NCBI GenBank assembly: GCA_002269645.1
Contig: NIVC01002228.1
Location: 1 to 29,343, forward strand
Length of the DNA stretch: 29,343 bases
DNA from: Macrostomum lignano
Lineage: Eukaryota
Direction: 5' to 3'
Shown: positions 76 through 29,343 of the stretch, piece by piece
Layout of the letters: each line of letters begins with the position of its first letter
Position numbering within the stretch: the stretch's first letter is position 1
Notes under the pieces: model-generated
What the model was told of the DNA's origin: nothing
Seen by the model: only the letters and a program-made list of their open reading frames with translations
The model's database searches: none
Position numbers and translations under genes: made by a program

Positions 76-195
76 CTCAATCAGACATTTCACAATTCAA
101 AAATTCAAGAAACCGCGTCTATTCGAAAACCAATAAATCTACTCGACTCTCTTAAGAAAAAAATCATGCATTTGATCAACTACTCAAGTACCCAC

Positions 196-1645: not shown

Positions 1646-1745
1646 CTGGAGAATGTGGGGACGAATTTGCAATTATCTGGCTACCAATTGGCTCAGAGCA
1701 GTCACGTGACAAGTTAAACGCACTAACTAATGAGAATGAGATTTT

Positions 1746-2079
1746 TTGATTACAGACGAGTTTACCGCAGAAGTTTTGGCACCCTGGCGCACTTTAAGCG
1801 CATTCTGCCGACTCCCTGAGCAGGCACACAAGCGCGCGGATATGTACGCAGTCATGAGCACGGGCACACACTCACACAGGAGTGTACAGCGGCCCAAACT
1901 TTATTTTATCGTTAGGCATGTACACTTCACAGTGCCTTGGGAGTTGGCCCTCAAGGCCGTTAATTGCACAAGCAGAGCCAAGCCGAGATTCCAATTCAGC
2001 CCCAACTTAAAGTGACTGCACTTGGAATCGAGCCTGGGCCGCTGGCACATCAGAGCGTCGCGCAGGCCCCCTTAGCCCT
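1746..2079 (-). mobile_element. Probable tRNA-derived SINE in UBR4 intron 4
   Basis: The minus strand has a B-box-like GGCTCGATTCC about 45 nt into the insert, ends in CTGTAATCAA, and is flanked by a candidate 7-bp TSD AAAATCT (2080-2086 and 1739-1745). It is more GC-rich than the other introns. No clear A box. Confidence 0.5.
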
Positions 2080-2091
2080 AGATTTTCGAAC

Positions 2092-5000
2092 CTGTGGCGT
2101 GCAAGTTTCGAAAATCTTGACATCAAAAGTACAAACCTTTCCACCCGAAGCTGACACCAGCCGACGAGACGAGCTGGCGGTCGATTCCGAGTCGTCGCCG
2201 CCTTCGCCGCCAGATCTTAGATCGGAGAAAATCGCCGACAGGCAAGCAACCGCGGCGTCTAACATAGCAACTGGTAGAGGATTTCCACAGCTACTATTAT
2301 TAGTAAATTCGCCAAATTTTACATCCTTAAAATAGCTTTCAACATAGGCAGTCAGGGCGGCCAGAGTGCCGCAGGCGGATAATTTCTCTTCAAATAGGGC
2401 GTCGATCCAAGCCTGACCTGTAGATTTGGCCAGATTAGCGAACACCTGTCGCCTGGCAGTGAAATAGCGACTATTTAGCTGGGCAACGCAGTAGAGATCG
2501 AATCTGTCAGCTAGAATATCACCGCTAGGCGGCTCAAGTCCGCCGGAGTCGCAGGTGCGAAGAAACCAACCAGATGGCGGCAGCAGGTTCAATAGTCGAT
2601 TAGCGGCGCGCCAATGATATTCGAGGGCGCGCATCGAATCGGGTCGATAGTCGGCCGTACTATTATTTGACAGAGCGTTAACACGCCAGGTTAGGCGTAG
2701 CAAGCCTAAACAGGCCGAATAGATCTGATCGTAAGTATCCGGGTTAGACATGAGACAGTCTAGCGCTAGATTATCCGGCTTACTAACTGAAGGCGCCGGG
2801 ACTGGCGGCAGTTCGTAATAAAGCAACCGATTTGCCAAATCTTCGTCCGAGGCCACGGCGGCCAGTGTTCCACACGAGGCAGAGTCGGCGGCTGTAGCAG
2901 CGGCAACAGTCGCCTGCGAACTGGTTGGCCTAAGAAATTGGCCAAAGAATGAATACTTCAACTGTCGCATCAAATTGTCTGGCGGATCGTAATAATACTG
3001 CACAAACGACGCCATCAGTAGGCAGAGACGACTAATTGGCAACGGATTTAACAGCTGCGTCGGTTTCTTCGCACCGACGATACCAACTGGCAGAAGAGAT
3101 TAACGGTTAAATTCAGCGCCTCTCGACGCTGTTGTCGGGCAAAGAACAATAGTTGCATCAGTTGGGCAACCTCCGGCCCGAGATCCGAGGCGCCGCTACC
3201 GCTAGATGTCAATTGATTCGGCCAGGTGTACAATAGTTCGGCATTTCTAGCTAGCCAACCGGTGCTTAAACTGGCAAACAGTCTCAGCCAGAGACTATCC
3301 AGCAATTTGCGATCCTCCGCCCCTGTAGATCTGCCAGCTTCTAGGCGAAGAAATATCACTTGAACTGCAACAGACAGAGAGCGCCAACTTGAGCGCAACG
3401 GTAACGGCTGGTTCGATGCATCAATAGGAAAGCCAACAGCGGCGGACAGACTGCTGCGAAACTGATCCGTCTGACCCGTCGGGCACTCAGTCAGCAACGA
3501 GTGCAGGCAGCGGTGAAAAGCTACTGACGCTGAGCTCAGAGCCGACTGCAGCGAATTTGATAGACCATTTGGCCAAGCATCGAAATTCGATAATATGCCA
3601 GCAATTGTGGCTGGCGATAGAGGCTGCGGCTTCTGAGCCTGCTGAACAGGCGATAGACAAGCGATTAGGCGACAGAGTTTTTCTACAACTAGCAACAGTT
3701 CGGAGGGCTGAGGCTGCGCTAGTGTCACACTTTGCTGCTGTGGCTGCTTCTGTTGCTGCTGTTGCGACGATTTCTGCTTCTGCTGTTGTTCATTCGTGGC
3801 TTCTTCAAAAACGTTGCCAAACAATAGGCCGCCAGTTGAGTCGCTATCGTCAGACGAGGCGGACGAATCGCCGGCAGATGAAGACGATGAAGATGAAGGA
3901 GGCTGAGCGGAGACGCTACCGCTAGACAGAGGCACGGCAAGGCGCTGCTGCTGCTGGCGCGGCTGCGGCGCCTGCAACTGTTGGCTCGCAGTTTCAAGCG
4001 CCGAGCGCAGATACAGATCCAACAGTTCCAACAGGCACTGGCAAGAAGCCACATTGGCTAATAACCCGCGCAATCTCTCGGGCGAATGATAAGCGTCTAG
4101 CGGACGAAGGTCAGCCACCGATGACGAAGCGGAAGATTCTGCTGAACTGGCTCCGGTCAGCAGCAGTGACGGACTGTCTAGCAGAGCTTTTAACGACCGC
4201 GAGACGGCTAAAAGACCCGCTGGACCTAGAAGCAGCTGGTGCTGCTGAGTTTGCTGGGTCTGGCGCCCTAGCATAAACTGCACGGCCCCATTTAAGCCTA
4301 GGGCGCCGCAGGCGAAGCGGAGATTGCGCCTAGCAAACACAGCGCCATCTCCATCGGCGGCGCTAACAGACGACGGCTCTAAAAGTCGGTCGACAATTCG
4401 CCAGGCGGCTGAGATCAAAGCGACTGAGTCTGCGGTAGCTTGACTCGTTGACGCCGAAGATTCTTCTTGAGCACTAGAAGCCGTTTGTTGTTGCTGAGGG
4501 GAATCGGGCCGGCCAGCCCAGGCGGTCAGGGCGGCAAACTGGGCTGCGATGGCCAATTCTATCAGCTGTACAGAAACGGCGCCGCCGGCGCTAACGGCGC
4601 CAATTGCCACGCCGAGCGACACGATTCGATCTACCAAGTCAAGCTCGATTAGAAGCTGCTTGGCTGGCAAACTAGCAGCCGCTTTCGAAGCCGCTTTGGT
4701 AGTAGCCGACGAGGACGACGCTGTCGAGAAGAAGCTGACTGCAACGGTGCCGCCGTCCGATAAGCAGTTTAGTCGGCTTTTTGCGCACTCCAGCAGGCGT
4801 TCGACAACGCCTAGGCTGTACGCGACAGCGCGACAGCGAGCTAAAACAGCGGCTCGAACAGTCGGATTAGCGTCATCAGCGTATTCAAAATTCGCGGCAA
4901 CCTCCTCCGATGTGGTTTTAGCCGCAGTGGACTTGGCAGTGGCAGCGGTTTCGTCATCAGCTATTGGCTCGTTGAGGAATTCCTCAATGGCGTTGGCGTA

Positions 5001-5192
5001 CACTCGAGTGTCGCGATCCAGTCGGCCAGTCAAATTCGGCCAGGTCAAAGCGGCCGCCGCAGTCTCAGGCAGAGGCCCCGACGTTGCCGACGAGGAAGTT
5101 GAAGCGATGACGGATTTCGCTGCAGTCAGATCGTCGGCTGATAACCCGCCAACGCCGCGGCACAGTAAGTTAAGCGTAGCAACAACATCCGC
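2092..5192 (-). CDS. UBR4: UBR4 exon 4 (3.1 kb; ORFs 3048-5048 and 2050-3042 joined by a one-base frameshift near 3065)
   Basis: Acceptor caacag|GCG at 5193/5192, donor CAG|gttcg at 2092/2091 (phase 0 to exon 5). Motifs SSDDSDSTGGLLFGNVFEE, DLGPEVAQLMQLLFF, YYYDPPDNLMRQL, YDQIYSACLGLL, ALEYHWRAANRLLNLLPPS and MLDAAVACL parallel the UBR4 N-terminal alpha-solenoid region. Confidence 0.88.
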
Positions 5193-6827: not shown

Positions 6828-8129
6828 CCGGGTGTCCGGATTGAACGGAAACGCTGCTGATTTTTTGAATATTTTTTGCAATTTCTCAGCAAGACAAGCA
6901 GCTGTACCATTTATTTTTGACAACAGTAAACAGGAAGGTGTCAGCATTGTTCTCATTCAAAATGGCCGCCATTGGCCGCGATCACGCGCTCCAGCCTCTT
7001 CCTGAACTGCTGGCACACCTTCCTCACATAGTTGGTGTCCATTCTCTCCCACGCCAGCCGAACAGCAGCCTGCAGCGCTTCCACACTGCTGTGGCAGGAT
7101 CTGCAGGCCTCGCTCTCCACACGCTGCCAGATTGAGAAGTCCAGCGGATTCAGGTCCGGACTGGAGGGCGGCCACATCGTCTTCGGCCAGAAGTTCGCCA
7201 TGTTGTCTGCCAAGAACTGCTGGGTTGTGGCCGCTGTGTGAGCCGGAGCACCGTCCTGCTGCCACACGTACTGTCCGTCAGGGTACTGCTGATGCAGCCA
7301 AGGCAGCACGTGCTGCTGCAGCAGCTGCTGGTAGCATGCAGCATTCACTTTGGTGCCTGGGTTGATGAAAATGGGGGGACACCTCCGTCCATCACTCGCA
7401 ACGACGCCCAGCATCATGATGGAGGCCGGGTGCTTAGACTTCATACTGTACTTCACGTGGGCAGGTGTGTCCGCGCTGCTGGCGGCGCTGATGTAGCGAG
7501 TGTTGCGCCTGTTCACGGCTTGGTCACAGGTGAACAGTTTCTCGTCGCTGAACACGCGCACCAGCGAGCCGTGGTTCTTCACCCACGTGAGCAACTGCCT
7601 GCAACGCTTGAGACGCGATACCTTCTGCTTCGAAGTGATGAGGTTCTTCGGCACCACCACTCTGGACACCATGCCGAGGTCTTCTTTGACGAGCTCCGAC
7701 ATTGTCGTCTTGCTCATGTCGTGCTCACGTGCCAGTCGGCGAATCGACCTTCGGGGATTTCGGTTGACCTTCGCCCGGACGGCTGCGACGGTCTTCTTCG
7801 TCCTTTTTGTCCTCGGACGACCACCCCCATGTCTTTTGGTGACATCTCCTGTGTCGTTCAGCAGCTTCCTCACAGTGAAAATCCTCTTTCTGCTCACATT
7901 GAGCACTTCTCTGATGTCGCTAGTTGACTTTCCAGCGCAAAGTAATTCAGCGATTGCTCGTCTTTGAGCCTCGTGCTCAGCCATGGTTAGGAATAAAGCT
8001 GCAAGAGTGGATGTATTAAATTCTGTGATTTCTGCTGGTTCTGACACCCATGCAAAATTTTGAATTTTGCGAAAGATTACGTAATTAACGACGTTTTAAG
8101 CAGCGTTTCCGTTCAATCCGGACACCCGG
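6828..8129 (-). mobile_element. Tc1/mariner-superfamily DD37D (maT) DNA transposon, apparently intact
   Basis: Perfect 31-bp TIRs CCGGGTGTCCGGATTGAACGGAAACGCTGCT at both ends, TA flanks (TATA on each side), one uninterrupted transposase ORF. Confidence 0.95.
6953..7984 (-). CDS. DD37D mariner-type transposase (343 aa from the ATG of MAEHEAQ)
   Basis: N-terminal HTH region (GGGRPRT), catalytic motifs VFSDEKLF, WQQDGAPAH and SPDLNPLDFSIW. I count 37 residues between the second and third Asp. Confidence 0.95.
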   Translation of the reverse strand: MAEHEAQRRAIAELLCAGKSTSDIREVLNVSRKRIFTVRKLLNDTGDVTKRHGGGRPRTKRTKKTVAAVRAKVNRNPRRSIRRLAREHDMSKTTMSELVKEDLGMVSRVVVPKNLITSKQKVSRLKRCRQLLTWVKNHGSLVRVFSDEKLFTCDQAVNRRNTRYISAASSADTPAHVKYSMKSKHPASIMMLGVVASDGRRCPPIFINPGTKVNAACYQQLLQQHVLPWLHQQYPDGQYVWQQDGAPAHTAATTQQFLADNMANFWPKTMWPPSSPDLNPLDFSIWQRVESEACRSCHSSVEALQAAVRLAWERMDTNYVRKVCQQFRKRLERVIAANGGHFE

Positions 8130-12109: not shown

Positions 12110-12550
12110 CAGATCGAGGCGTCACCATGGATTTTATGGTGGGGGACAAAGCCAAGAATTGTACATTTTGCATGACTAAATTCCTAAATTCGAAATCATT
12201 TTTGCGCCACAATCACTCATTTTAGCGCCGCAGGCACTCATTTTAGCGCCGCAGGCACTCATTTCAGCGCCGCAGGCACTCATCTTAGCGCGCCGTAGTC
12301 ACCATTTTGGTGCCGCAGGCGCTATGTTTTGTCACCCTGAAGCAAAATTATTCATTTCCGGTCAGCAAAGATAGGGTCTATTATTAAATTTTTTACATTA
12401 TTTTACACGCGATTTTACACGCGACCCATTTCTAAACGTCGCTGCTCCATAATGTGGGGGACAAAGAATCGGCATGTCCACCACCATAGCGTGGGGGGGG
12501 GGGGGCGGGGCCGTCATGTCCCCCTTGGTCCCCCAGTGGCGACGCCCCTG
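12110..12550. mobile_element. Degenerate GC-rich MITE-like element with an internal 21-bp tandem repeat
   Basis: Imperfect terminal inversion (GAGGCGTCACCA vs reverse complement GGGGCGTCGCCA), duplicated GTGGGGGACAAAG, GC-rich island in AT-rich flanks. Ends uncertain. Confidence 0.35.
12215..12320. repeat. 21-bp tandem repeat ACTCATTTTAGCGCCGCAGGC, about 5 copies
   Basis: Directly visible: three near-perfect and two degenerate copies. Confidence 0.9.
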
Positions 12551-14800: not shown

Positions 14801-15172
14801 CAGTGACGTGTGACTATCAGTGACGTGTGACTATCAGTGACGTGTGACTATCAGTGACGTGTGACTATCAGTGACTTGACTAATAGTGACTTGACTATCC
14901 GTGACGTGTGACTATCAGTGACGTGTGACTATCAGTGAAACTTGACTATCAGTGACGTGTGACTATCAGTGACGTGTGACTATCAGTGACGTGTGACTAT
15001 CAGTGACGTGTGACTATCAGTGAAACTTGACTATCAGTGACGTGTGACTATCAGTGACTTGACTATCAGTGACGTTGACTATCAGTGACGTGTGACTATC
15101 AGTGACGTGTGACTATCAGTGACTGTGACTATTAGTGAAACTTGACTATCCGTGACGTGTGACTGCCAGTGA
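14801..15172. repeat. 17-bp minisatellite CAGTGACGTGTGACTAT, about 22 copies
   Basis: Directly visible tandem array with shortened variants (CAGTGACTTGACTAT, CAGTGAAACTTGACTAT). Followed by AACCTAACC-type low-complexity sequence at about 15225-15295. Confidence 0.95.
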
Positions 15173-16229
15173 CAACTGCCGGCAATTCGATTATTTCATA
15201 TTGACTGCCAACTCTATCCCCATCACTAACCTTACCTGCAACCTAACCTACCAAACCTAAACCACATAAAATAAACCCTAATCCTGACTAACCTAAATAA
15301 TCGAGAGTCAAATGACTTGTATCCAGTATTTCAACCAACTGTTCTTGACTTGCGCTGATTCCACTTTATATAATTTAGAAGATACCATGATTTCGGATTT
15401 TTATCATGTTTGATTCATTCGTATAGTGTAGCTGTACATGTACCAGATACAAACCGGCACCAGACACACTACAATACACTCGGCCCGGGTCCATATCTGA
15501 TGGAACTGCCTTTAAGGGATCCCCTCTCAAGCCATGGCTGATTTTCTAGACATCGCTACCTCTAGGGAAAATTCCGCAGTTAAGAATGCCCATTTTGCCT
15601 CTCCGATGTTGAGAATACGAATCACTTCATCTGTGAATGCCCCCCAGCCTTTACTCAGGACAGGCTCACCTACCTCGGCCCAAACCCGGACGTTTACAGG
15701 CCCGGGAATTTCTGCAGTTCGCTATTTAAAGGCTAAGGGCTACTGGGCGAGCGACCATTTAACTCGCGTCGGCACCAGCACCACCGGATCTCCCGACACC
15801 GAAACACAAGCTGCCCAGAGACCTCTGAAGCTAAGTCAAGTGACGAAAGTAAGTCAAGTCTTTAAATTGGGAGGGGGGTGATTTCGCTTCAAAACGCTTT
15901 CATCTACTGAACAGTTTATTCTTCAAAATAATCCGTGCATAAATTATCGGATTACGGTGCAGACGCAGAGTGACTACTGCAGTAAATCAGTGAACTGAAC
16001 GCTACATGTATAACAAAATTAACAAATATAAGTATAAAAATTTAACGTAAATAAAATTATTTTAATAATATATAAAGCCAGTAAATATGCACGTCAGTTT
16101 CATTTAAATATTAAAGTATTGACTTGAAGTTTTCAAACACATTAACATTTCTCAAACAATGTGTGTACTTAGGCTTGTGGATTGTACATGTACTTCAGAG
16201 ATCATTAGATTCTAGCTCATTCTAGCTCT

Positions 16230-16291: not shown

Positions 16292-19200
16292 TCAGAAAGC
16301 GGTCATTATGTCCGCCTCGTTGGGGCCATGTACCTCGGAATCCTTGAGTTCATTGCTACCAGCTGCTGAGCAACCCTCGGATGCGCTGGGCCTCTGTCGC
16401 AATTTCGCTGCGAGCCTTTGGCTAATGTAGATGAGCAGCTCGACCACCTCGCAGACAGTCAGAATCGAGACGCCTGACCAGAGACCCAAGGCGCCTGTAG
16501 ATTGAAAAAAATCGTTTACGATTCTAAGTGGGAATTCGATTGTCTACGTCTCTACGTAGCAAACAATTCGAATTAAATTTTTGCGATCGATACCGAAGTG
16601 AAATCATAGTGTATAGGTCACTCTGAAGTAGCTTTTACAACCCCTAGGAACTGGCCTGTACTGGACTCTATAGGTGCAAGTTTTGTTTTAGTTCTCCCGA
16701 CTTGCTTCCGCTTTGAGATCGCATTGGACTGAAACTCAACGCTGCAAAAGCTTTGGGAAAATTTTCAGAAACTTTTTGACGAAGTTTCGGTGCATTTTAT
16801 TGCTTTTAATTTTTACCACACCGTGATCTGATTCGAAACGCATGCTCGTAAAATATGAACGATTTCCTCCTATGTCTGCAACGAGATTCTTGGTAGGGTA
16901 GGCCTCCTCTTCGGTGATCTCCTGACCTTCGGAGGTCCACGCCTGAACTGTCAGTCTGGCCAGGCGGTTCTGCAGCGACTCGAGCTCTTTTTCGAAGCCC
17001 AGAATGTCCTTGGCGCTCTGATTGGCAAAAGGCACCCCGGTGAGGCTAAGTGACTTCAAGTACGCTTGGTAGAAATTGGCTACACCTCTAAGACCGCTAA
17101 CGCTGGTCCGGTAGCCGTAGTTGCTTGCAAGCTTCTGCAATAGCAGAGTGGATCTGGCAGTCTTCAAGTTAGGCCACGGATAAGTGACGTAACGGACACT
17201 GTAGCCGTCTGTCCGACACGGAGACTGACAGCGCTTCATCGCCTCAAACTCGTACTGGTTTATCCGCGATACCTGCTCATTGTACCGTATCTCAAGATCG
17301 ATAGACAAGTTGCCGATGTCCTTGGCGTCGAAACAGTAGCTGTACTGGTCGAATAAGTCCACCTTGACTGGCAGAATCGACGGTAAACAGTTGCAGTTTT
17401 CGATGAACTGCTGTACAATGTACGAATTGATGCAATCCTCTCTACCGGAGACGTTGAACTGTCGCTCAGTGGCAGTCAGAACGCTGGATAAACGTTAAGT
17501 TATGACCAGTGAAATATCATGCACTTTTATCTGTTCTACGCTCGTACCTTCGATGCTAGCTAAAGCTCAACGCAATTATTTCTCAAGCACTGACCTTGAA
17601 CTGTTCGGCAGTAGCAGCATCGCCCGGAGTCTTCTGATCATCTCAGACCAATTCTCAGAGTGGCCGACCAACTCTGCAGCTTCCTCCATTCTGAAGAATG
17701 TTTAATTCAGTTCAAAGGAGCCATTGAAACCTTCTGCTTTAATTTGCCGTAGGCAATTTTCAAGAAAATTTAATGTCACTGAAGAAAGTTACCTACTTTA
17801 GGTCTTCGTTTGACATGGACTTCTTCCATGACGGCAGTCGATATACAATTGGCTCGGTGGTCTCTAGGCACGGCCTCGATGCAGTTGAGAGTCTGGAGTA
17901 TCTTTCGAACCTGAGCTGCACGTCCATGCGTTGGGAGGCGGCCACGTCGATGCCCTTGGACGACCAGGGGAACGAGTCTTCCGGAACAATGATCGCCTAG
18001 GAGTGGAAGGTTGTGGTAATAGTTTTGGATTTACGTGGGGTTTCTGCACTAGACTTCTTATTTTACAATCATTTGAGACATTTGACAATTTCATTTGAAT
18101 TTTTTAAAATGTTTCGCATTTTGGCACAAAATAAAAGAAACATGCTTTCTAAGTCTTTCCAAGGTAGGTTCAGTCAAGTCTGCATTGACTTTCTGGATGT
18201 AACTTTTTTGTTACCTCAGGGTTAGCTTAGCTCTCGCTTTTGAGTTTTTAGTGTACAGTTTTGTGTGTTTTTGTCTTTGACTTCAGTCATTTTTATGATT
18301 CGGTGCAAAAATTTTTAATGACTACACCTCGATCAACTTTCCTTGTGTGCCTTTACTGATTCGCAAATGATATCTCATTGTGCACTTTCACATCCGGATT
18401 GTGATTCCTCTATCAAAAACACACCGCTTACCTTGAAAGCCAGGTCGCTGATCTCCAAGCTCATACCGTTATGAAACGCACTGGTCATTTCGGGCATGTC
18501 CTCGACTGTTTTCCCTTTAGAGTCTGTGGAGTCGGTGAAGTACGTTATTGACAGCTGACTCCCTGCTAGCTGGGTGCTCGACATGTTGGCGATGAAGCTC
18601 TGCTTGAGAAACTGGTGGCACATTCCCAGCTGCGGATGGTCGATATTGACGAAGTGCTCCTTGGTGCATTTCTGGCCAGCGAAGGTGCAGTCGGCCAGGC
18701 CGATGCTGAGGTCGTTGCTGAACTGCCTGGCGAGCAGGTGGCTGCCGACCGAGTCAGTGAAGACGCCTCTGACGCTGGTTTCAGCAGCTGAAATTTTTGT
18801 GCCGACAGGCAATGCGTGAAGCTCAGAATTTATAGTTTTAACAACTTTTAGGCTCCGACTTACAACAAGTAGGAATTGTGCAGCGTTCGAATGCCATCTC
18901 AAAAAACTGAGTTTGAAAAATTGGTACCGACATTGTGTGCAGCAGAGATGGATCGGCAAAGCAGACGGGAGAATTGGAGATTAACACTGGGTGCCGTCTG
19001 AAAGTGATGTTAAAAATGAGATGCAGTCGTTCTACAGCTGCTTGCAAAAAATGAGGCTAGTGAAACTCACGTGAAGGTGCCGTTCTCAGTTTCCGCTAGG
19101 TCAATAACTATGCTCACTGGACGACAAAAGTTGTCGCTGGTGTTCCCAATACGGTCGGGGGTTTGAATCTTTAGTCGCAGCAGTTTTTCAACAAAGCGAA

Positions 19201-22152
19201 CACCTGAAATGCAATATTTATCAACTATAGTTCGGCGCATTGGGTTCACTTCACGTGCATGTTGATTTAAAAACATCCATTCAGACGAATGAAAAGTTGC
19301 TGTTTTAAGATAGTGGGTGTGTGCTTTCTTGCTAATAAGATCGTAGCTAGATAGTCTTACTCCATCCACTCCCTAGGTGTGAAACTAAAACGGATACCAA
19401 AAATAGCACCAGCAAATCACTTGAACAATCGGCCTTCAAAATGTTTCTTTCCCTAGTTCGTTAGTGCCATTTTTGGTTTGCTAGTTTCCAACCGAGTACA
19501 AAAAATTGAAGAAATTGTTTTCCCTAGCAGAGATTAGAAAGTTCAGAAACGTACAAACCTTTATTGAGTTTCATCTTCATCTGCACGTTCTCCACGCTAC
19601 TCCAAGGCAAACAGTCCCGGCCCGACTCTGTCCAGTTCGTCCGACCAGTGTACACCACATTCGCTCCGGCATTTTTGCTCACGGCGCAGTCGAACTCTTT
19701 AGTAGCGGCTGTAATGTGCTGCGTTAGTTTGTTAGATAGTTCGCAACAGGCCACCCGCAGAGAATCGCCTAAGCTACCGAAGTTTCTTTCACCAGCCCTA
19801 AATTGATGTCTCAGTGAACGGAATGAATACTAGCTTCTTCGACTGCTTTGGCTGTAATCAACACCATTGACTCACCGCAGTAAGGGACGTCGCACAAGCC
19901 AGCGTTTAGTCTTTCAGAGTCCATGAAGAAGCAGTAGGGTCCGCCTGAATAAGCTTCCAATTGACCAAACCTTCCAATATGCATTGGTTTGTCTTCTAAA
20001 AGAAGTCACGGATTAAAGCTGATGGAGAAACTAATTAGCTTTATTAATTAGAGTATATTCAGCACACAAACCAACATCCCGGATGATCATAACAGCAGCG
20101 GTCCTGTCTGATCCGCATGGCTCCGTTTTGCTGTTGCCGCACTGCCTGTCGCAGCTGGTCCAGCTCCCGTCGGCCAGAGTGGCAGCGGCCTCGGAGCTGC
20201 CGCAGAGGCAGTCGCCGCGGTTCAGCAGCGCTGCAAACGGAGCGTTGAACTTGTCGCAGCACTGGGCGCACGGCTCAAAGGCCTCCAGGCCTCCGCTGTA
20301 GCACGTGATGTTGAAAGCCGTGTCCGCTGTCACTGGGAAGCAGCCAATTATTTCCCGTCTGGGTCCTGTGTGAGCGCATGGAGTGCGTCAGTTCAAGAGT
20401 GAGAGAGTCAGTCAGTCAGTCAGTCAGTCAGTCAGTCAGTCAGTCAGTCAGTCAGTCAGTCAGTCAGTCAGTCAGTCAGTCAGTCAGTCAGTCAGTCAGT
20501 CAGTCAGCCAGTCAGTCAGCCAGTCAGTCAGTCAGTCAGTCAGTCAGTCAGTCAGTCAGTCAGCCAGTCAGTCAGCCAGTCAGTCAGTCAGTCAGTCAGT
20601 CAGTCAGTCAGTCAGTCAGTCAGTCAGTCAGTCAGTCAGCCAGTCAGTCAGTCAGTCAGTCAGTCAGTCAGTCAGTCAGTCAGTCAGTCAGTCAGTCAGT
20701 CAGTCAGTCAGTCAGTCAGTCAGTCAGTCAGTCAGTCAGTCAGTCAGTCAGTCAGTCAGTCAGTCAGTCAGTCAGTCAGTCAGTCAGTCAGTCAGTCAGT
20801 CAGTCAGTCAGTCAGTCAGTCAGTCAGTCAGTCAGTCAGTCAGTCAGTCAGTCAGTCAGTCAGTCAGTCAGTCAGTCAGTCAGTCAGTCAGTCAGTCAGT
20901 CACTCACTCACTCACTCGCTAAGTCAGTCACTTACGAGTTGCAATTGGGAGAAACTCTGTCAGCGGCAAACCCGGAGGTAAGCGGCACCTGGACTCAGTC
21001 TCTGAGAAGTTGAGTTTCATCAGCAAGCCACCCAGTACTTCAGCATTCGAGCTCCCTCTCTGCAGCATGCGTGCTGCATCATTCCATCGCATGCACTGCT
21101 TGTAGATCACGTAGGGCTGTACAGGTGGCTTAACCGAATAGTTTCCAAGTGTTTTTGAATCGGAAGGATCAATCGTAATACTAGATGGCCCATAGACAAC
21201 TGCATAGCTTGCGTTTCCAAGGTAGTTACTTCCGTCGAGACTTCTCCTACAGTCGGAGCTTTTATTTTTTGCTGCAAAAAATTGTTTTGACTCGCATTTT
21301 TGCGGGAAAATCTATTTTCACGCATTTATAATGCTGGAAATACATCGCTTAAAATTAATTTCAAGAATTTATAGTCACTGCTGAGTTCGTCTCGTAGAAA
21401 AGCAGCTGTAAGTACGAGTTATTCAATGTATAAACCGACTTTTAGTCTCAGTACTGTAGCTTCTACCGGGGTTATGGGGATCTTTAGATGCTTACAGTCT
21501 TGCAGGTGCCAAGTGGATATCTAAGCTTAGTCGTGGAGGTGTCAGGTCGATCTCTAAAGCTAAGTAAATCTCGAAGGACCCGAGGTGAAGCTTAACTACA
21601 CAAATTCGCAGGTTGTAGAAGGAAGCAAACATAAATTTAGAACTTTCAAGGCAGCTTACACTTTACTAGCAGTTTCAGTTGGCTCATCACGGCTGATTCA
21701 GTTTGCTCCAATGCAATCAAAAACGCTTGCGTCGGCTTGTTAAAAAAAAGAGTTTCCGATTTAGACAAATCAAAGTCGTAAAGTTTGATTTTTTCGCTTG
21801 TGTTACTCTTAGAGCCGAGCTCTACATTGTAAATATCCGATGTCGACAGCATCGGAACAATTCTACTCATGGTGACGGCGTGAGTCGGGCAGATGTACAC
21901 ATCCGGGAACTGGTACGGCAGAGTGGACACCGTTATTGTTGTTAACACCGGAGCCTGCTGGTACCTGTCGAACAGGGTGTACAGGTGGTAGCCGAACCCG
22001 CTGTAGGTAGCCAGCAGAAAAGTGAGCCATAGTGACCTGCCGATGAAGCTGGACTGCTCAGAGAATCTGCCCAGTCCGTGAGCACTTGTGTAGCTGCAGA
22101 ACTGCTTGACAGGTGAGCTCAGCTCATGCTGGTCAGCGGGTTCGCTGCTCAT
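16292..22152 (-). CDS. DEG/ENaC (amiloride-sensitive/ASIC-like) channel subunit with kringle-WSC-kringle insertion, ~12 exons, ~1100 aa
   Basis: Exons 21660-22152, 20936-21271, 20072-20365, 19876-19944, 19559-19768, 19071-~19340/19375, 18864-18997, 18432-18787, 17797-17996, 17595-17690, 16867-17483 and 16292-16494. Hallmarks: TSAHG, TM1 (RSLWLTFLL), FPDVYIC, DCTFAGQKC...HPQLGMCHQF, thumb cysteines CINS...CNC...CQSPC, YPWP, ADIGG-ALGLWSGVSILTVCE (TM2 with GxS filter). All junctions are phase-consistent except exon 5/6 (acceptor unresolved), and the penultimate donor reads GA. Confidence 0.9.
18864..19768 (-). other. Kringle domain 2 of the DEG/ENaC protein (exons 5-7)
   Basis: DCAVSKNAGANVVYTGRTNWTESGRDCLPW ... 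DNFCRP ... SPVCF ... ERCTIPTC gives the six-cysteine kringle pattern, with a long insertion between C2 and C3. Confidence 0.8.
20072..20365 (-). other. WSC domain (single symmetric phase 1-1 exon)
   Basis: IIGCF ... CAQCC ... FAALLNRGDCLCG ... SCDRQCGNSKTEPCGS fits the WSC cysteine pattern (GCF...C..C...A...G..C.CG...C...C.G....CG). Confidence 0.85.
20407..20930. repeat. (TCAG)n microsatellite, about 125 units, in intron 2 of DEG/ENaC gene 1
   Basis: Directly visible, with occasional CCAG variants and a TCAC tail. Confidence 0.98.
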
Positions 22153-24190: not shown

Positions 24191-24966
24191 ATTTTTTCAA
24201 TTAATAAGCGCGGCTGTTTGACGAGATGCACTATAGCCATAGTTGTTCGACAAGACAAATAGCTTTTTCTCCCACTACTCGCTTTCCTCATACTTCCTCA
24301 CTACTCGATTTCTTGCAAGACGCAAGCAAAATCAGCACTCACAGTGTTGTCTATGGTCAAACTAAGCCACACAACTCAGTCGTCTATGGGTAAAACAACT
24401 CTTAAAACAGCCAATTGAAGCATGATAAAAAGTATGGAATAATGACCGCGACAAAAGTGTGAATAATGGCCGCAAAAGTGTGGAATAATGATAGATTGTG
24501 TATATGGTTTTGGAGGTAGACAATGATAAAATTTTCACGAGTGGCGAAGCCACTGAGTGACTAAAATTTATCATTGTCTATGACAAAACCATATACACAA
24601 ACACATTGTCTCATGAATGTATTTTTAGAAGCCTAAAATAATGACTCCTAAGCATGGAATAATGAGCGTACAGCATGACACAATGACTGCGCGCTGAGTT
24701 AAAAGTATAGATACAATGCACTTGTATAGTATGCAACTTCGTTGAATAATGGCCATAGACACTCGTGCGCTACGATACTATACAATCTACCATTAAATGA
24801 TTTATTGGTCCCGGTATAGAAGTAGTTGTACCATAGACTATTGATTCCTTGCTGCCAGGGCGCCCATTAAAGGTCAATAAAATAAGCAATTGGATTTTAT
24901 ATGATAAAAGCGTGCATTAAATGTATTATCATTTGTTAACCATGTCGTAGTATTTCGCAGAAACAT

Positions 24967-26280
24967 TAGATAGCGCTCTACCGTTCGTGTGCTTTTTTGG
25001 CCGGTGATCTTGCAAATGTCAGCATTTAAGAAGCTATCATCGGCGAGTTCTTTCACAACTGTTGGACGCACGCAGTGGGCGGTGAACCGACGACTAAGTC
25101 CAGCAGCTTGTGAAATGGTCGACATGAGACTCGCCAAGGTGTTGACACCGACAGGCTGTTTAGCACAGTACCAATTAGACGTTTTCCAGTTGGAAACTTT
25201 TGGCTTCAAAAAGAAAGGCGTGCCTGGAGTAGCACCAGAGCTGCTGCTAGAAATCGACTCGCTTTGCTTACGTAGATACATCTTTAGTGCCTCGACTGGG
25301 CACTTTTCTGCGATTGAGACCATCACCGCGTTCTTGTAGTCATCGCACGCTTCTCGGTTGAGGCTGTTGCCTACATTCTTAACTTTGCCAAGCCTAAGCC
25401 GCACAACCTCCGCTCCGTCGGGCCTCTTCTCAAAGATAAAGCTGTTCTCACTGATTCAGCGACGCCACTCGCGTCCCGGATTTCCAAAGTAATAGATGCA
25501 GTTGTAATATACTTCGTGCAACAACGCCGTCGGATATTCTCTGCTGAAGTAAGCGGCCAGTTTGCGCAAATCGTCCTCCTCCAGGTCTTCAAAATGTTTA
25601 GATCTGCCACCTGCACTGATGAAACTACGAGCCAGTGCTTTCAAGGTCGCATTGGCATTAGAGAACTCTCTGTCGGAAATGATATTCATTCGCCTGGTCT
25701 TCATCAGATGTCGGTACAATGCCGCTCGCATACAAATCAGAGTAGACGATGCCGGAAGGTTGCCGTCACGCTTCCTGAAGGTTCCATAGAACAACCGTAG
25801 TGCAGATGCAATGGCCTCAGCGGAATTGGTTTGCAGATCGACACGGGCCTAAAAAGTTACGACGTTCAAAAGCAATACAAGAATTGACGAAAAGACCTAT
25901 AGAAAATCTGAATTCAAAGCATGTAGAATACAAAGATTAACTGAAACCACAGGATATCTGATTTCGAAGCAACTAACCTCGGGATGTTCATCCATGAACG
26001 TGTTCAGCTTTTTTTACATAACATTCGGCTTGCTGTCTGCTACTGGCGTTCTCTGCTGAGCGTTCCAACTCGGAAATCGCAGCCTCCAGCCTGTTTAAAT
26101 CAGGCTCGGTGCTCATCAGCTCCTCCAGCATGGCGTCATCGATATCTTCGGGCAAAGCATAGTTGGTGTCCAGCGGTCCATTATCAAGCTCCTCCTGCGT
26201 CCGATCGCGAGCATGTTGTTCGAGTGTTTTATCCGACTCGACAGAGGACGGGCCGCTAACCATCTCGTTGGGAAATCTAA
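24967..26280 (-). pseudogene. Crypton/DUF3504-like tyrosine recombinase, disrupted
   Basis: LRLFYGTFRKRDG...STLICMRAALYRHL, YFGNPGRE, FFLKP...NWY...PVGVNTL...AAGL...FTAHCVR...KITGQKS...ERY. Intron 25849-25977 (GAG|gttagt...tttag|GCC). Lesions: extra base in the T7 run at 26009-26015 and in-frame TGA at 25456-25458. Confidence 0.85.
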
Positions 26281-28251: not shown

Positions 28252-29135
28252 ATGAGCATGGAACCCGCTGACCAGCATGAGCTGAGCTCACCTGTCAAGC
28301 AGTTCTGCAGCTACACAAGTGCTCACGGACTGGGCAGATTCTCTGAGCAGTCCAGCTTCATCGGCAGGTCACTATGGCTCACTTTTCTGTTGGCTACCTA
28401 CAGCGGGTTCGGCTACCACCTGTACACCCTGTTCGACAGGTACCAGCAGGCTCCGGTGTTAACAACGATAACGGTGTCCACTCTGCCGTACCAGTTCCCG
28501 GATGTGTACATCTGCCCGACTCACGCCGTCACCATGAGTAGAATTGTTCCAATGCTTTCTCAACGCGACATTTATAATGTTGAGCACGTTTCGAAAAGCA
28601 GCAATCCCAGCGAAAAGATTAAACTGTACGAATTTGACTTGTCGACACCCAGACGCTTCTATCTAAACATGCCGACATATGCTTTTCTGCGTGCCTTAGA
28701 AGTTACGGAGCAGACAATGATAGATCAGCTACAGCCTTCAAAAAACGGTAGGGATTCTGCCAGATAATCTAGAAACCTTAAATCCATATACTCAAAATGA
28801 CTCATATTCACTTCAGCCAAAAGAGGCTATGCCTGCCGGACCAGCCTAAATGGTGAGGAGTACATTGGAAACGCAAGCTCGGCAGCCGTCTATGGGTCAC
28901 TAGCTTTTCTTTGGAGTCTATCGACTACAGAAACACAGCTGGGCCACCTGTACCGCCTTACATAGCCTACAGCAGTGCATGCGATGGAATGATGCAGCAC
29001 GCATGCTGCAGAGAGGAAGCTCGAATGCTGAAGTACTGGGTGGCTTGCTGATAAAACTCAACTTCTCAGAGACTGAGTCCAGGTGCCGCTCACCTCCGGG
29101 TTTGCCGCTGACAGCGTTTCTCCCAATTGCAACTC
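28252..29135 (+). CDS. Second DEG/ENaC-kringle paralog, exons 1-2 (continues off the right edge; exon 2 frameshifted in this sequence)
   Basis: Exon 1 is 28252-28747 (donor G|gtaggg) and is nearly identical to copy 1 over HG/TM1/FPDVYIC. Exon 2 is 28817-29135 (ttcag|CC ... C|gtaagt), kringle start ACRTSLNGEEYIG; it is 319 nt and appears to lack two single bases. Confidence 0.8.
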
Positions 29136-29343
29136 GTAAGTGACTGACTTAGCGAGTGAGTGAGTGAGTAAGTGGAGTGAGTAAGTGAGTGAGTAAGTGA
29201 GTGAGTTCAAGAGTGAGTGAGTTCAAGAGTGAGTGAGTTCAAGAGTGAGTGAGTTCAAGAGTGAGTGAGTTCAAGAGTGAGTGAGTTAAGAGTGAGTGAG
29301 TTCAAGAGTGAATGAGTTAAGAGTGAGTGAGTTCAAGAGTGCT
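29136..29343. repeat. (GAGT)n microsatellite grading into a 16-bp unit GAGTTCAAGAGTGAGT, intron 2 of DEG/ENaC copy 2
   Basis: Directly visible; truncated by the window end. Confidence 0.9.

What the first reader, a model, noticed from the sequence alone, without database searches (positions are those of the whole stretch)
16292..22152. DEG/ENaC ion channel with a kringle-WSC-kringle sensor module in its finger domain
A complete channel (HG motif, TM1, palm, thumb, TM2 with G-V-S filter) is interrupted, right after the post-TM1 strand where the variable finger lies, by about 440 aa of extracellular modules spliced in frame: kringle 1 (split by a WSC domain) and kringle 2. The finger is the established ligand/protease-sensing region of this family. 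Kringles bind proteins and protease-pathway ligands, WSC domains bind glycans, and the two co-occur in Kremen receptors. I do not know of this architecture in a characterised DEG/ENaC. It suggests a receptor-channel gated by glycans, microbes, matrix tethering or proteases, in a ~1100-aa subunit about twice the usual size. A second copy nearby implies a family.
Basis: partly seen in the sequence, partly recalled or inferred. Interest (0 to 1): 0.9.

Follow-up and report, generated by a model that had tools for sequence, protein, structure and literature searches.

The report
Flatworm sodium channel carrying kringle-WSC insert
This is a real gene of the flatworm Macrostomum lignano for a DEG/ENaC-type sodium channel subunit with a 389-residue block of extracellular binding modules (a kringle with a WSC domain nested inside it, then a kringle-like module) spliced into its gating "finger"; the design defines a small, unstudied, lineage-restricted family.

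Summary
On the minus strand, 22152-16292, twelve GT-AG exons join into one 1058-aa reading frame. It has the HG motif, TM1, a 389-aa insert (exons 2-7, 21271-18864), beta-ball, palm, thumb and TM2 with G-V-S.

Pfam gives ASC at 124 bits and a borderline WSC. Kringle stays below threshold. When the WSC is cut out in silico, module 1 becomes a recognisable kringle (plasminogen E=7e-8). Module 2 is only kringle-like.

The organism is Macrostomum lignano. At least eight deeply diverged paralog lineages (about 30-50% identity) keep the same insert, cysteines and intron phases. RNA-seq-built transcripts of several paralogs contain it. Nothing like it appeared outside this species among 1.84 billion representative proteins or in the literature searched. 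It is already in UniProt as uncharacterised "WSC domain-containing protein".

Caveats:
- This copy has lost the canonical donor before TM2, possibly through one missing T.
- The neighbouring copy has two 1-nt gaps.
- The insert block is phase 1-1, so a skipped isoform would stay in frame.

Most likely function (inferred): a trimeric Na+ channel whose finger-mounted module binds a glycan or protein ligand, or a matrix tether, and biases gating. Verdict: new variant of a known kind.

The parts
21660..22152 (-). Exon 1: N-terminus, HG motif (TSAHGLGR), TM1, beta1-beta2, first finger helices; donor AAGT|GTAAGC, phase 1
   Evidence: Pfam ASC 63.9 bits on this ORF alone; splice site and phase; identical in P0001
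20936..21271 (-). Exon 2: kringle 1, N-terminal part (C1, Y-x-G-N-x-S, long loop, C2-x-x-W, N-F-S-x-x-E-S-R-C3-R-x-P-P-G); phase 1 to 1
   Evidence: cysteines invariant in paralogs; kringle match after WSC excision
20072..20365 (-). Exon 3: WSC domain, one symmetrical phase 1-1 exon nested inside kringle 1
   Evidence: Pfam WSC 28.3 bits; paralogs 39-43 bits; PDB profile hits to yeast Wsc1 and Kremen1 WSC; Foldseek Wsc1 TM 0.55
19876..19995 (-). Exon 4: linker plus kringle 1 C-terminal part (GPYC4FF...C5DVPYC6); phase 1 to 1. An alternative acceptor at 'tattcag' is used in UniProt model P0001
   Evidence: the longer form matches paralogs P0002, P0007, P0009, P0010 and P0159; HGF/plasminogen kringle alignments
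19559..19708 (-). Exon 5: kringle-like module 2, start (DC1...YTGRTNWTESGRDC2LPW); phase 1 to 1
   Evidence: Pfam Kringle 17.5 bits, sub-threshold; tPA, HGF and ROR1 kringle hits at E about 1e-3
19071..19203 (-). Exon 6: module 2, middle (IQTPDR...DNFC3RP...); phase 1 to 2
   Evidence: invariant T-P-D, N-x-C-R
18864..18997 (-). Exon 7: module 2, end (PVC4F...C5TIPTC6); phase 2 to 1; end of the 389-aa insert
18432..18787 (-). Exon 8: last finger helix and beta-ball (ADCTFAGQKC...GMCHQF)
   Evidence: aligned to FaNaC 184-241, ASIC5 and ENaC gamma
17797..17996 (-). Exon 9: palm strands (AIIVPEDSFPW...)
   Evidence: 73% identity to P0002
17595..17690 (-). Exon 10: variable 32-aa segment
   Evidence: same size (96 nt) and phases as in P0002 locus L001
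16822..17483 (-). Exon 11: thumb (CxxxxxxxxxxCxC...), palm and pre-TM2 ...NLVADIGG. The paralog-type end is at 16867, but there the intron starts GA, not GT. The next in-phase GT, at 16821, adds 15 aa
   Evidence: Pfam ASC 41.6 bits; donor comparison with L001 and L002
16292..16494 (-). Exon 12: TM2 (GALGLWSGVSILTVCEVVE, G-V-S filter), C-terminus, stop TGA
28252..29135 (+). Second, divergently oriented copy: exon 1 28252-28747, 69-nt intron, exon 2 28817-29135, then off the window. It corresponds to UniProt P0003/P0004 and has two 1-nt gaps relative to P0003

Best explanation
This is a gene of Macrostomum lignano for a subunit of a lineage-restricted DEG/ENaC subfamily. A cassette of six exons (389 aa, 22 cysteines) was shuffled, in phase 1, into the finger region of an otherwise ordinary channel. 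The cassette holds a kringle with a complete WSC domain (one symmetrical 1-1 exon) nested between its CRxPxG and GPYC motifs, followed by a second, enlarged kringle-like module. That part is shown. The rest is inferred. The protein assembles as a trimeric amiloride-type Na+ channel. The three cysteine-rich modules sit at the outer top corner of the extracellular domain. In the nearest solved relatives, this is where the finger helices bind the agonist (FaNaC) or carry the protease-sensitive inhibitory domain (ENaC). The module binds an extracellular partner, most likely a glycan or glycoprotein through the WSC face and the variable kringle-like surfaces. The partner could be a soluble cue or a fixed matrix or mucus tether. 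Binding or pulling moves the finger helices and so biases thumb, wrist and pore opening. The many paralogs, with near-identical cores and sharply diverged finger and module-2 surfaces, suggest a family of sensors with different specificities. The copy in this window may be impaired or mis-assembled at one splice donor just before TM2.
For: Gene model:
- Twelve GT-AG exons give a continuous 1058-aa ORF.
- ASC scores 124 bits.
- P0001 is 97% identical with the same exon chain.

Transcript support:
- Paralog proteins P0002, P0010, P0155, P0159 and P0007 carry BOX15_ locus tags. Those gene models come from a genome-guided RNA-seq transcriptome (StringTie/TACO, TransDecoder).
- They contain the insert inside one ORF.

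Conservation:
- The same intron positions and phases are found in loci L001 and L002 and, as far as it could be mapped, L003.
- All insert cysteines are invariant across lineages that are 29-49% identical to P0002 over the insert.
- Insert identity tracks channel-body identity.

Domain identity:
- The WSC is supported by Pfam, a PDB profile search and Foldseek.
- Kringle 1 with the WSC excised hits only kringle proteins. Plasminogen scores E=6.7e-8, and the alignment runs across the excision joint. Pfam Kringle matches 6 of 6 members.
- Foldseek's top hits for the whole insert are the Kremen1 ectodomain (E=5e-5) and Wsc1.

Position:
- The flanks abut as in a canonical channel. The deletion construct aligns contiguously to ASC HMM positions 1-285.
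- The site falls between FaNaC residues about 166 and 184.
- The finger alpha1-alpha3 helices form the FMRFamide pocket and the gating lever in FaNaC, and carry the protease and ion sites in ENaC (PMC11026163).
- The topology is coherent: disulfide-rich secretory-pathway modules lie in the extracellular loop.

Diversification: copy 1 versus copy 2 is a mosaic. dS is 0.045 over codons 1-100 and 0.026 over the kringle 1 C-half. The finger helices are saturated and module 2 is only 36-64% identical.
Against: - No functional, expression or binding data exist for any member; the mechanism is inference from position and domain types.
- Kringle scores stay below Pfam's gathering score. The module 2 model (pLDDT 72) finds no kringle by Foldseek. 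The whole-insert model has only pLDDT 60.
- The canonical kringle lysine-binding site is occupied by the WSC insertion, so kringle-type ligand binding is not expected for module 1.
- In this window the donor before TM2 is GA. No RNA-seq-derived (BOX15_) protein for this particular copy was returned.
- The cassette is phase 1-1, so an insert-less isoform is possible.
- The copy 1 / copy 2 mosaic may be gene conversion rather than diversifying selection.
Confidence: 0.6

Rival explanations
1. The cassette is not a gating sensor. It is an anchoring or assembly module that fixes the channel to glycocalyx, mucus, cilia or a partner protein, or helps folding, trafficking or subunit sorting among the many paralogs. 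Gating would then be set by something else (constitutive, pH, peptide).
For: In Kremen1 the kringle and WSC form a rigid protein-protein scaffold rather than a lectin (PMC5014086). Foldseek's best hit is Kremen1. WSC and the kringle 1 C-half are the most conserved insert parts between copies 1 and 2, at 91% identity and dS 0.026, which fits a constant partner.
Against: The insertion point is the most gating-relevant and ligand-relevant corner of the family. A pure anchor could sit anywhere in the loop or at a terminus. Module 2 and the finger helices diverge fast between recent copies.
Confidence: 0.22
2. The cassette is an autoinhibitory finger domain released by proteolysis, functionally analogous to the ENaC GRIP domain.
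For: ENaC carries its protease-sensitive inhibitory domain in the finger (PMC6197857 listed). ENaC gamma has extra residues in the same stretch. A furin-type RPRR lies at the kringle 1/WSC junction in this gene and in copy 2.
Against: The RPRR motif is absent from the other paralog lineages (SRSVFRH, SRSLLQR and others). The 22 cysteines would hold cleaved fragments together by disulfides. There is no sequence relation to GRIP.
Confidence: 0.08
3. The copy in this window (and/or its neighbour) is a decaying duplicate. The family is real, but this locus does not make a working channel.
For: The exon-11 donor reads GA where paralogs have GT. The best rescue adds 15 aa between DIGG and ALGLW, inside the start of TM2. 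Copy 2 has two 1-nt gaps and a premature TAG relative to P0003. No RNA-seq-derived protein of this copy was returned. The published M. lignano assembly is highly redundant, with 180 Mb of duplicated blocks.
Against: All twelve exons are otherwise open with intact splice sites. One missing T (GGAGG[T]AAATC) restores a good donor, and single-base gaps are typical long-read assembly errors. Exon 1 dN/dS between the copies is 0.23. The UniProt models P0001 and P0008, from another assembly, are 97% (P0001) and about 86% (P0008) identical and open.
Confidence: 0.25
4. Annotation artefact: the kringle/WSC exons belong to a separate nested gene, or are cassette exons that are normally skipped.
For: The block is phase 1-1, so skipping keeps the frame, and the deletion construct is a perfect 669-aa ASC protein at 132 bits. 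Some UniProt models skip exon 4.
Against: The insert has no start codon, signal peptide or stop. RNA-seq-assembled ORFs of at least four paralogs read through it. Every family member found, including fragments, carries insert sequence, and no insert-less relative was found. Cysteines have been conserved across deep paralogs for as long as the channel body.
Confidence: 0.05

Closest known systems
FMRFamide-gated Na+ channels (FaNaC; PDB 7yvb, 8on7) and DEG/ENaC channels in general
   Same: Best solved sequence relatives (E=2.5e-22 and 1e-17 with the family profile). Shared features are the HG motif, two TM helices, beta-ball and thumb cysteine framework, and the GG-x-LGLW-x-G-x-S TM2. The ligand and gating site lies in finger helices alpha1-alpha3.
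   Different: There are 389 extra residues of foreign modules in the finger. Identity to FaNaC is low. No peptide-gating evidence exists. The M. lignano DEG/ENaCs tested by others (Mlig049925, Mlig051885, Mlig041003) are different genes.
ENaC alpha/gamma/delta with the GRIP domain
   Same: A family-specific domain inserted in the finger that controls gating. Extra length lies in the same stretch between beta2 and the CxFxGxxC motif.
   Different: GRIP is a beta-strand elaboration with furin and prostasin sites, not a shuffled kringle/WSC cassette. There is no sequence similarity. The insertion point here appears closer to the last finger helix. Protease motifs are not conserved.
Kremen1/2 (Kringle-WSC-CUB Wnt co-receptors)
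   Same: The only well-studied animal proteins that combine a kringle with a WSC. Best Foldseek hit of the insert model (E=5e-5). Profile hits to both its kringle and its WSC.
   Different: In Kremen the domains are in tandem and followed by a CUB domain and a single TM helix. Here the WSC is nested inside the kringle, there is no CUB, a second kringle-like module follows, and the carrier is an ion channel.
[quoted passage not shown]
   Same: A precedent for DEG/ENaC subunits that acquired an extra extracellular cysteine-rich module. These are also uncharacterised: no currents were seen in oocytes.
   Different: Different module type (EGF) and different phylum. I did not examine where the EGF sits.
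Yeast Wsc1 cell-wall mechanosensor (PDB 7pz2)
   Same: The WSC domain matches by profile (E=2.5e-5) and by fold (TM 0.55). It is a precedent for a WSC acting as a glycan-matrix-attached force sensor (PMC9024836).
   Different: Wsc1 is a single-pass signalling sensor, not a channel. The WSC here has 10 cysteines rather than 8. Conservation of the aromatic clusters was not tested.

Membership tests
DEG/ENaC (Pfam ASC, PF00858) | Match to the ASC profile above the curated cut-off | tested here: met
   124.4 bits against 23.6 for the spliced protein, and 132.1 bits for the insert-deleted construct
DEG/ENaC (Pfam ASC, PF00858) | Short N-terminus with HG motif, TM1, large cysteine-rich extracellular loop, TM2 with G-x-S filter | tested here: met
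   TSAHGLGR at residues 22-29; TM1 SLWLTFLLATYSGFGYHLYTLF; CxFxGxxC beta-ball; thumb C...CxC; GALGLWSGVSILTVCE
DEG/ENaC (Pfam ASC, PF00858) | Intact pre-TM2/TM2 junction (...D-I-G-G-x-L-G-L-W...) | tested here: inconclusive
   Both halves are present, but the intron between them starts GA in this window. Paralogs have GT (L001, L002). The next in-phase donor adds 15 aa. One missing T would explain it
DEG/ENaC (Pfam ASC, PF00858) | Trimeric, Na+-selective, amiloride-sensitive current | not testable with these tools
   Needs expression and electrophysiology
Kringle (PF00051) | Score above Pfam gathering threshold (34.3 bits) | tested here: not met
   Module 1 scores nothing as encoded. With the WSC excised, the P0002 member scores 27.7 bits (E=3.4e-6), the best E-value of the six, and all 6 members match at E<=1. 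Module 2 scores 14.5-17.7 bits, with 7 of 8 members matching, best E=2.5e-4
Kringle (PF00051) | Six-cysteine framework with Y-x-G...S-G-x-x-C-x-x-W, N-[YF]-C-R-x-P and P-[WY]-C-[FY]...C-x-[IV]-P-x-C motifs | tested here: met
   All six cysteines and the flanking motifs are invariant in both modules across the paralog lineages. Both modules carry large extra loops
Kringle (PF00051) | Family profile retrieves solved kringles specifically | tested here: met
   Module 1 without WSC: 59 hits, all kringle proteins, with plasminogen at 6.7e-8, HGF 1e-6, tPA K2 1e-4 and the Kremen1 kringle 1.5e-4. Module 2: 39 of 40 hits are kringle proteins, but the best E is only 1.4e-3 and mostly covers the first 25-35 residues
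Kringle (PF00051) | Kringle fold | tested here: inconclusive
   The whole-insert model (pLDDT 60) aligns to Kremen1 KR+WSC over about 200 columns, but the TM score is only about 0.2. The module 2 model (pLDDT 72) gives no significant PDB match
WSC (PF01822) | Score above Pfam gathering threshold (27.8 bits) | tested here: met
   28.3 bits on the exon-3 ORF and 23.5 bits within the whole protein. Paralogs P0010, P0012 and P0013 score 39.1, 41.1 and 43.0 bits
WSC (PF01822) | WSC fold / similarity to solved WSC domains | tested here: met
   Profile hit to Wsc1 7pz2 at 2.5e-5 and to the Kremen1 WSC at 4e-5. Foldseek gives 7pz2 at TM 0.55, probability 1.0, and also the glyoxal oxidase WSC
Kremen-type receptor | Tandem Kringle-WSC-CUB ectodomain on a single-pass membrane protein | tested here: not met
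   No CUB hit. The WSC is nested, not tandem, and the carrier has two TM helices of an ASC channel
ENaC GRIP-type finger domain | Finger insertion with conserved polybasic protease sites flanking an inhibitory tract | tested here: not met
   Only one RPRR motif, restricted to the copy 1/copy 2 lineage. No similarity to ENaC in this stretch

The most novel reading that the evidence does not exclude
A self-contained receptor-channel. The finger-mounted kringle(WSC)-kringle-like module is itself the agonist or tether receptor, so that binding of a glycan or glycoprotein, or mechanical pull from a glycan matrix, directly opens a DEG/ENaC pore. The eight or more paralog lineages, with fast-diverging module surfaces, would form a flatworm-specific chemosensory or mechanosensory repertoire. 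This would be a new gating modality for the superfamily and a natural example of domain insertion creating a ligand-gated channel.
Probability: 0.25. Interest if true: 0.85.

Novelty: new variant of a known kind. Interest (0 to 1): 0.62.

Why it matters
DEG/ENaC channels are gated by very different stimuli: protons, peptides, proteases and force. Structural work points to the finger as the place where this diversity is encoded. This family is a natural experiment. Whole, recognisable binding modules were exon-shuffled into that spot and kept through many duplications.

If the module controls gating, three things would follow:
- It would add glycan- or matrix-dependent gating to the family's repertoire.
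- It would give a built-in candidate for the long-sought extracellular tether of mechanosensory DEG/ENaCs.
- It would show how nature builds a ligand-gated channel by domain insertion, which is useful for channel engineering.

The nested WSC-in-kringle is also an unusual case of one disulfide module inserted into another through a symmetrical 1-1 exon. Macrostomum lignano is transgenic-ready, so the idea is testable.

The limits are that everything functional is inferred, the family is so far confined to one species, and this particular copy may be defective.

Tried and rejected
- Bacterial-style ORF listing was only useful for finding exon-sized open frames. The gene had to be spliced by hand.
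- Pfam on unspliced pieces missed kringle 1 entirely. Only excising the WSC in silico revealed it.
- The search for homologous proteins with the insert profile returned just 4 proteins because of its word pre-filter. The exhaustive representative search was needed.
I therefore used P0001 and P0002 subsequences.
- AlphaFold of the whole insert was only moderately confident (pLDDT 60). The module 2 model found no kringle or anything else in the PDB, so I do not call module 2 a bona fide kringle.
- The nested-gene hypothesis is rejected. The insert has no start codon, signal peptide or stop, and paralog transcripts read through it.
- A search for an insert-less sister channel with the ASC-only family profile found only M. 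lignano members or C-terminal fragments that still begin inside module 2.
- Literature searches found no description of this architecture. They covered ENaC+kringle+WSC, Macrostomum+amiloride-sensitive, and the six Mlig gene identifiers.
- dN/dS on deep paralogs was not attempted because synonymous sites are saturated. Within the window only exons 1-2 of copy 2 are available.
- A megablast of the transposase-like ORF against phages was irrelevant and empty.
Full report
**1. What is in the sequence**

The window is eukaryotic DNA, with alternating GC-rich exons, AT-rich introns and microsatellites. On the minus strand between 22152 and 16292, open frames carry pieces of a DEG/ENaC channel, a WSC domain and a weak kringle signal.

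I read the strand base by base and chose GT/AG sites that keep the frame. This gave twelve exons:
- exon 1, 22152-21660
- exon 2, 21271-20936
- exon 3, 20365-20072
- exon 4, 19995-19876
- exon 5, 19708-19559
- exon 6, 19203-19071
- exon 7, 18997-18864
- exon 8, 18787-18432
- exon 9, 17996-17797
- exon 10, 17690-17595
- exon 11, 17483-16822
- exon 12, 16494-16292

Together they make one 3177-nt CDS of 1058 aa.

The spliced protein scores 124 bits on Pfam ASC (cut-off 23.6). If exons 2-7 are removed, the flanks abut as in a canonical channel: ASC scores 132 bits and residues 18-331 align contiguously to profile positions 1-285.

**2. Independent support for the gene model**

The organism is the flatworm Macrostomum lignano. 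UniProt entry A0A1I8HN37 (P0001, 658 aa, 97% identical) has the same exon 1 to exon 8 chain. It differs only in an alternative acceptor in exon 4.

Paralog P0002 (BOX15_Mlig006056g1, 1049 aa) aligns end to end with my model at 51% identity. I mapped it on its locus L001. It has the same introns at the same positions and phases, with exons 9 and 10 of identical size (200 and 96 nt) and insert exons of 292-303, 122, 142 and 134 nt against 294-336, 120, 133 and 134 nt here. Locus L002 (P0007) shows the same phases. In L003 (P0010) the first five insert boundaries are likewise phase 1, after which the mapping stalled.

The BOX15_ annotation is not ab initio. It is the Mlig_RNA_3_7_DV1 genome-guided transcriptome (StringTie/TACO on RNA-seq, ORFs by TransDecoder; PMC5730564). 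Assembled mRNAs of several paralogs therefore read from exon 1 through the insert into the channel body.

No such transcript-derived protein was returned for the window's own copy.

**3. What the insert is**

*WSC (exon 3).* The evidence is:
- Pfam gives 28.3 bits on the exon ORF (cut-off 27.8) and 39-43 bits in paralogs.
- The family profile hits yeast Wsc1 (2.5e-5) and the Kremen1 WSC (4e-5) in the PDB.
- The AlphaFold model of the P0002 insert (pLDDT 60) is matched by Foldseek to the Kremen1 ectodomain (E=5e-5) and to Wsc1 (TM 0.55).

*Module 1 (exons 2 and 4).* As encoded, it gives no Pfam hit. Its cysteine pattern fits a kringle interrupted after C3 (C1...YxGNxS...C2xxW...NFSxxESRC3RxPPG [WSC] GPYC4FF...C5DVPYC6).

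I tested this by deleting the WSC in silico from six paralogs (A4). The result:
- All six then match Pfam Kringle (best E=3.4e-6, 27.7 bits, residues 51-118 on profile positions 20-79).
- The profile retrieves only kringle proteins from the PDB: plasminogen 6.7e-8, HGF 1e-6, tPA kringle 2 1e-4 and the Kremen1 kringle 1.5e-4.
- The alignments run straight across the excision joint (CRsPpgseGPyCF against CRNPDADKGPWCF).

Kringle 1 split by a WSC is therefore confirmed. The score remains under Pfam's 34.3-bit gathering value.

From my knowledge of plasminogen kringle 4, the WSC sits where the anionic centre of the lysine-binding site lies (the D-x-D before GPWC). A classical lysine-binding function is therefore unlikely for this module.

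*Module 2 (exons 5-7).* It keeps all six cysteines and the YTG..N.T.SG..C..W, NFCR and C.IP.C motifs. It is about 60 residues longer than a kringle. Pfam gives only 14.5-17.7 bits (7 of 8 paralogs match, best E=2.5e-4). PDB hits are nearly all kringles, but the best is E=1.4e-3. Its own AlphaFold model (pLDDT 72) has a long helix and a three-stranded sheet and matches nothing in the PDB. I call it kringle-like or kringle-derived. UniProt names a fragment of this region in another paralog 'Kringle domain-containing protein' (P0160).

*Exon structure.* The exon 2/3, 3/4 and 4/5 junctions and both outer edges of the cassette are in phase 1. The WSC is one symmetrical 1-1 exon. This is the classical signature of exon shuffling of extracellular modules (established knowledge). 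It also means that exon skipping would stay in frame.

**4. Where the insert sits in the channel**

The nearest solved relatives are Aplysia FaNaC (7yvb, E=2.5e-22 with the family profile), Malacoceros FaNaC1, ASIC5/BASIC, ENaC gamma and ppk26. The residues before the insert align to FaNaC up to about residue 165. The residues just after it align from FaNaC 184 into the CxFxGxxC beta-ball motif, which lies about 30 residues downstream.

The cassette is therefore in the distal finger, among helices alpha1-alpha3. The exact helix boundaries were not resolved.

In FaNaC1 these helices form the peptide pocket, and their movement starts gating. The same corner carries the protease and ion sites of ENaC (PMC11026163).

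**5. Family and distribution**

An exhaustive HMMER search with the insert profile against 1.84 billion representative proteins found nine proteins at E<1e-30. The seven that span most of the insert are all from M. lignano. All weaker hits match only the WSC part or only the kringle part, and are multi-WSC or multi-kringle proteins of other organisms.

With the other searches this gives at least eight lineages below about 50% identity:
- the window pair (P0001, P0003, P0004, P0008)
- P0002/P0005
- P0006/P0007
- P0009
- P0010/P0155/P0013/P0166
- P0012/P0159
- P0017
- P0167/P0168/P0032

All of them carry insert sequence. The short entries are C-terminal fragments that still begin inside module 2. 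No insert-less close relative was found.

All 22 insert cysteines are conserved. Per-exon identity of the insert (about 25-55%) tracks that of the channel body (about 30-75%). The cassette has therefore been part of the gene, under constraint, through the whole radiation.

Full-text literature searches found no description of the architecture or of these gene identifiers. The M. lignano DEG/ENaCs tested in oocytes by others are different genes. The nearest precedent for a composite DEG/ENaC is C. elegans EGAS ('EGF plus ASC'), which is also functionally silent so far.

**6. Blemishes of the window's copies**

- *Copy 1, donor before TM2.* Paralogs join ...ADIGG to ALGLWSG... through GGGG|GTAAGT (L001) or GGAG|GTAACT (L002). 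The window reads GGAG|GAAATC. The next in-phase GT is 45 nt downstream and would insert 15 residues into the start of TM2, which is probably harmful. A single missing T (GGAGG[T]AAATC) would restore a good donor.
- *Copy 2.* This copy lies on the plus strand: ATG 28252, exon 1 to 28747, exon 2 28817-29135. It lacks one G in each of two places (the G-run 28894-28896, and 28972) relative to the UniProt model P0003. This gives a frameshift and a TAG.
- *Interpretation.* Single-base gaps are typical of long-read assemblies. The Mlig_3_7 copy of paralog P0007 also looks frameshifted. I therefore cannot decide between assembly error and decay.

Between the two copies, exon 1 has dN/dS 0.23. The pair is a mosaic. 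Codons 1-100, the kringle 1 C-half, the WSC and the palm are nearly identical (dS 0.03-0.05; 87-91% protein identity). The finger helices, the kringle 1 loop and module 2 are strongly diverged (dS saturated; 36-68% identity). This indicates either gene conversion or fast evolution of the exposed surfaces.

**7. Interpretation**

*Shown.* This is a bona fide DEG/ENaC gene family. A conserved, transcribed, cysteine-rich kringle(WSC)-kringle-like cassette sits in the extracellular finger.

*Inferred.* The cassette is a binding module placed on the gating lever. The most economical mechanism is that binding of an extracellular glycan or glycoprotein, soluble or as a fixed tether, is transmitted through the finger helices to the thumb, wrist and pore.

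*Rivals.*
- A pure anchoring or assembly role.
- A protease-released inhibitory domain. An RPRR motif exists only in this sub-lineage.
- For this locus specifically, a decaying duplicate.
- An annotation artefact, which is very unlikely.

**8. Verdict**

The functional interpretation is plausible but untested. The architecture is already deposited as uncharacterised predictions, yet it is apparently undescribed and confined to one flatworm. It is a new variant of a known kind, of moderate to high interest to channel biologists.

Noticed in passing
window 28252-29343 (+): The second channel gene copy is divergently oriented about 6 kb from the first. Relative to UniProt P0003 it lacks one G in the run 28894-28896 and one at 28972, giving a frameshift and a premature TAG. 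This is either an assembly indel or a pseudogene.
   Followed up: partly
window 16860-16870 (-): The exon-11 donor reads GGAG|GAAATC where paralog loci L001 and L002 have G|GTAAGT and G|GTAACT. One missing T would restore GTAAAT.
   Followed up: yes
window 20406-20930 and 29139-29341: Large microsatellites start directly after the exon-2 donor in both copies: (AGTC)131 in copy 1, and (AGTG)n with 16- and 32-nt units in copy 2. They look like arrays seeded on the GTAAGTGACT/GTGAGT splice-donor motif.
   Followed up: no
window 22152-18432 versus P0003 (copy 2): Divergence between the two neighbouring copies is a mosaic. TM1/beta1-beta2, the kringle 1 C-half, the WSC and the palm are near-identical (dS 0.03-0.05). 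The finger helices, the kringle 1 loop and module 2 are strongly diverged. This points to gene conversion or fast-evolving surfaces.
   Followed up: partly
window 20350-20365 (-), protein ATRPRREIIGC: A furin-type R-P-R-R motif lies at the kringle 1/WSC exon junction. It is present in copies 1 and 2 but not in the other paralog lineages.
   Followed up: partly
window 176-5048 (-): Three large open frames of a Ser/Gln-rich gene match the N-terminal region of E3 ligase UBR4 (Pfam E3_UBR4_N, 52 and 24 bits). The gene runs off the window start.
   Followed up: partly
window 6953-8047 (-): An intact 364-aa ORF with HTH and DDE_3 transposase domains (Tc1/mariner-like) forms a GC-rich island (0.57) in AT-rich DNA.
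   Followed up: partly
window 24874-25794 (-): ORFs with weak DUF3504 / phage-integrase (tyrosine recombinase) similarity lie between the two channel genes. This may be a Crypton-like element remnant.
   Followed up: no
window 14801-15173 and 12196-12320: Tandem arrays of a 17-nt unit (22 copies) and a 21-nt unit (6 copies) lie downstream of the channel gene.
   Followed up: no
L002 16490-17349 and 20353: In paralog P0006/P0007 the segment QEISEEEAYPAKNLLADIGG is a separate 63-nt micro-exon about 800 bp downstream of ...LTSYG. The UniProt model P0006 skips it. The NCBI model P0007 is frameshifted in the palm exon.
   Followed up: partly
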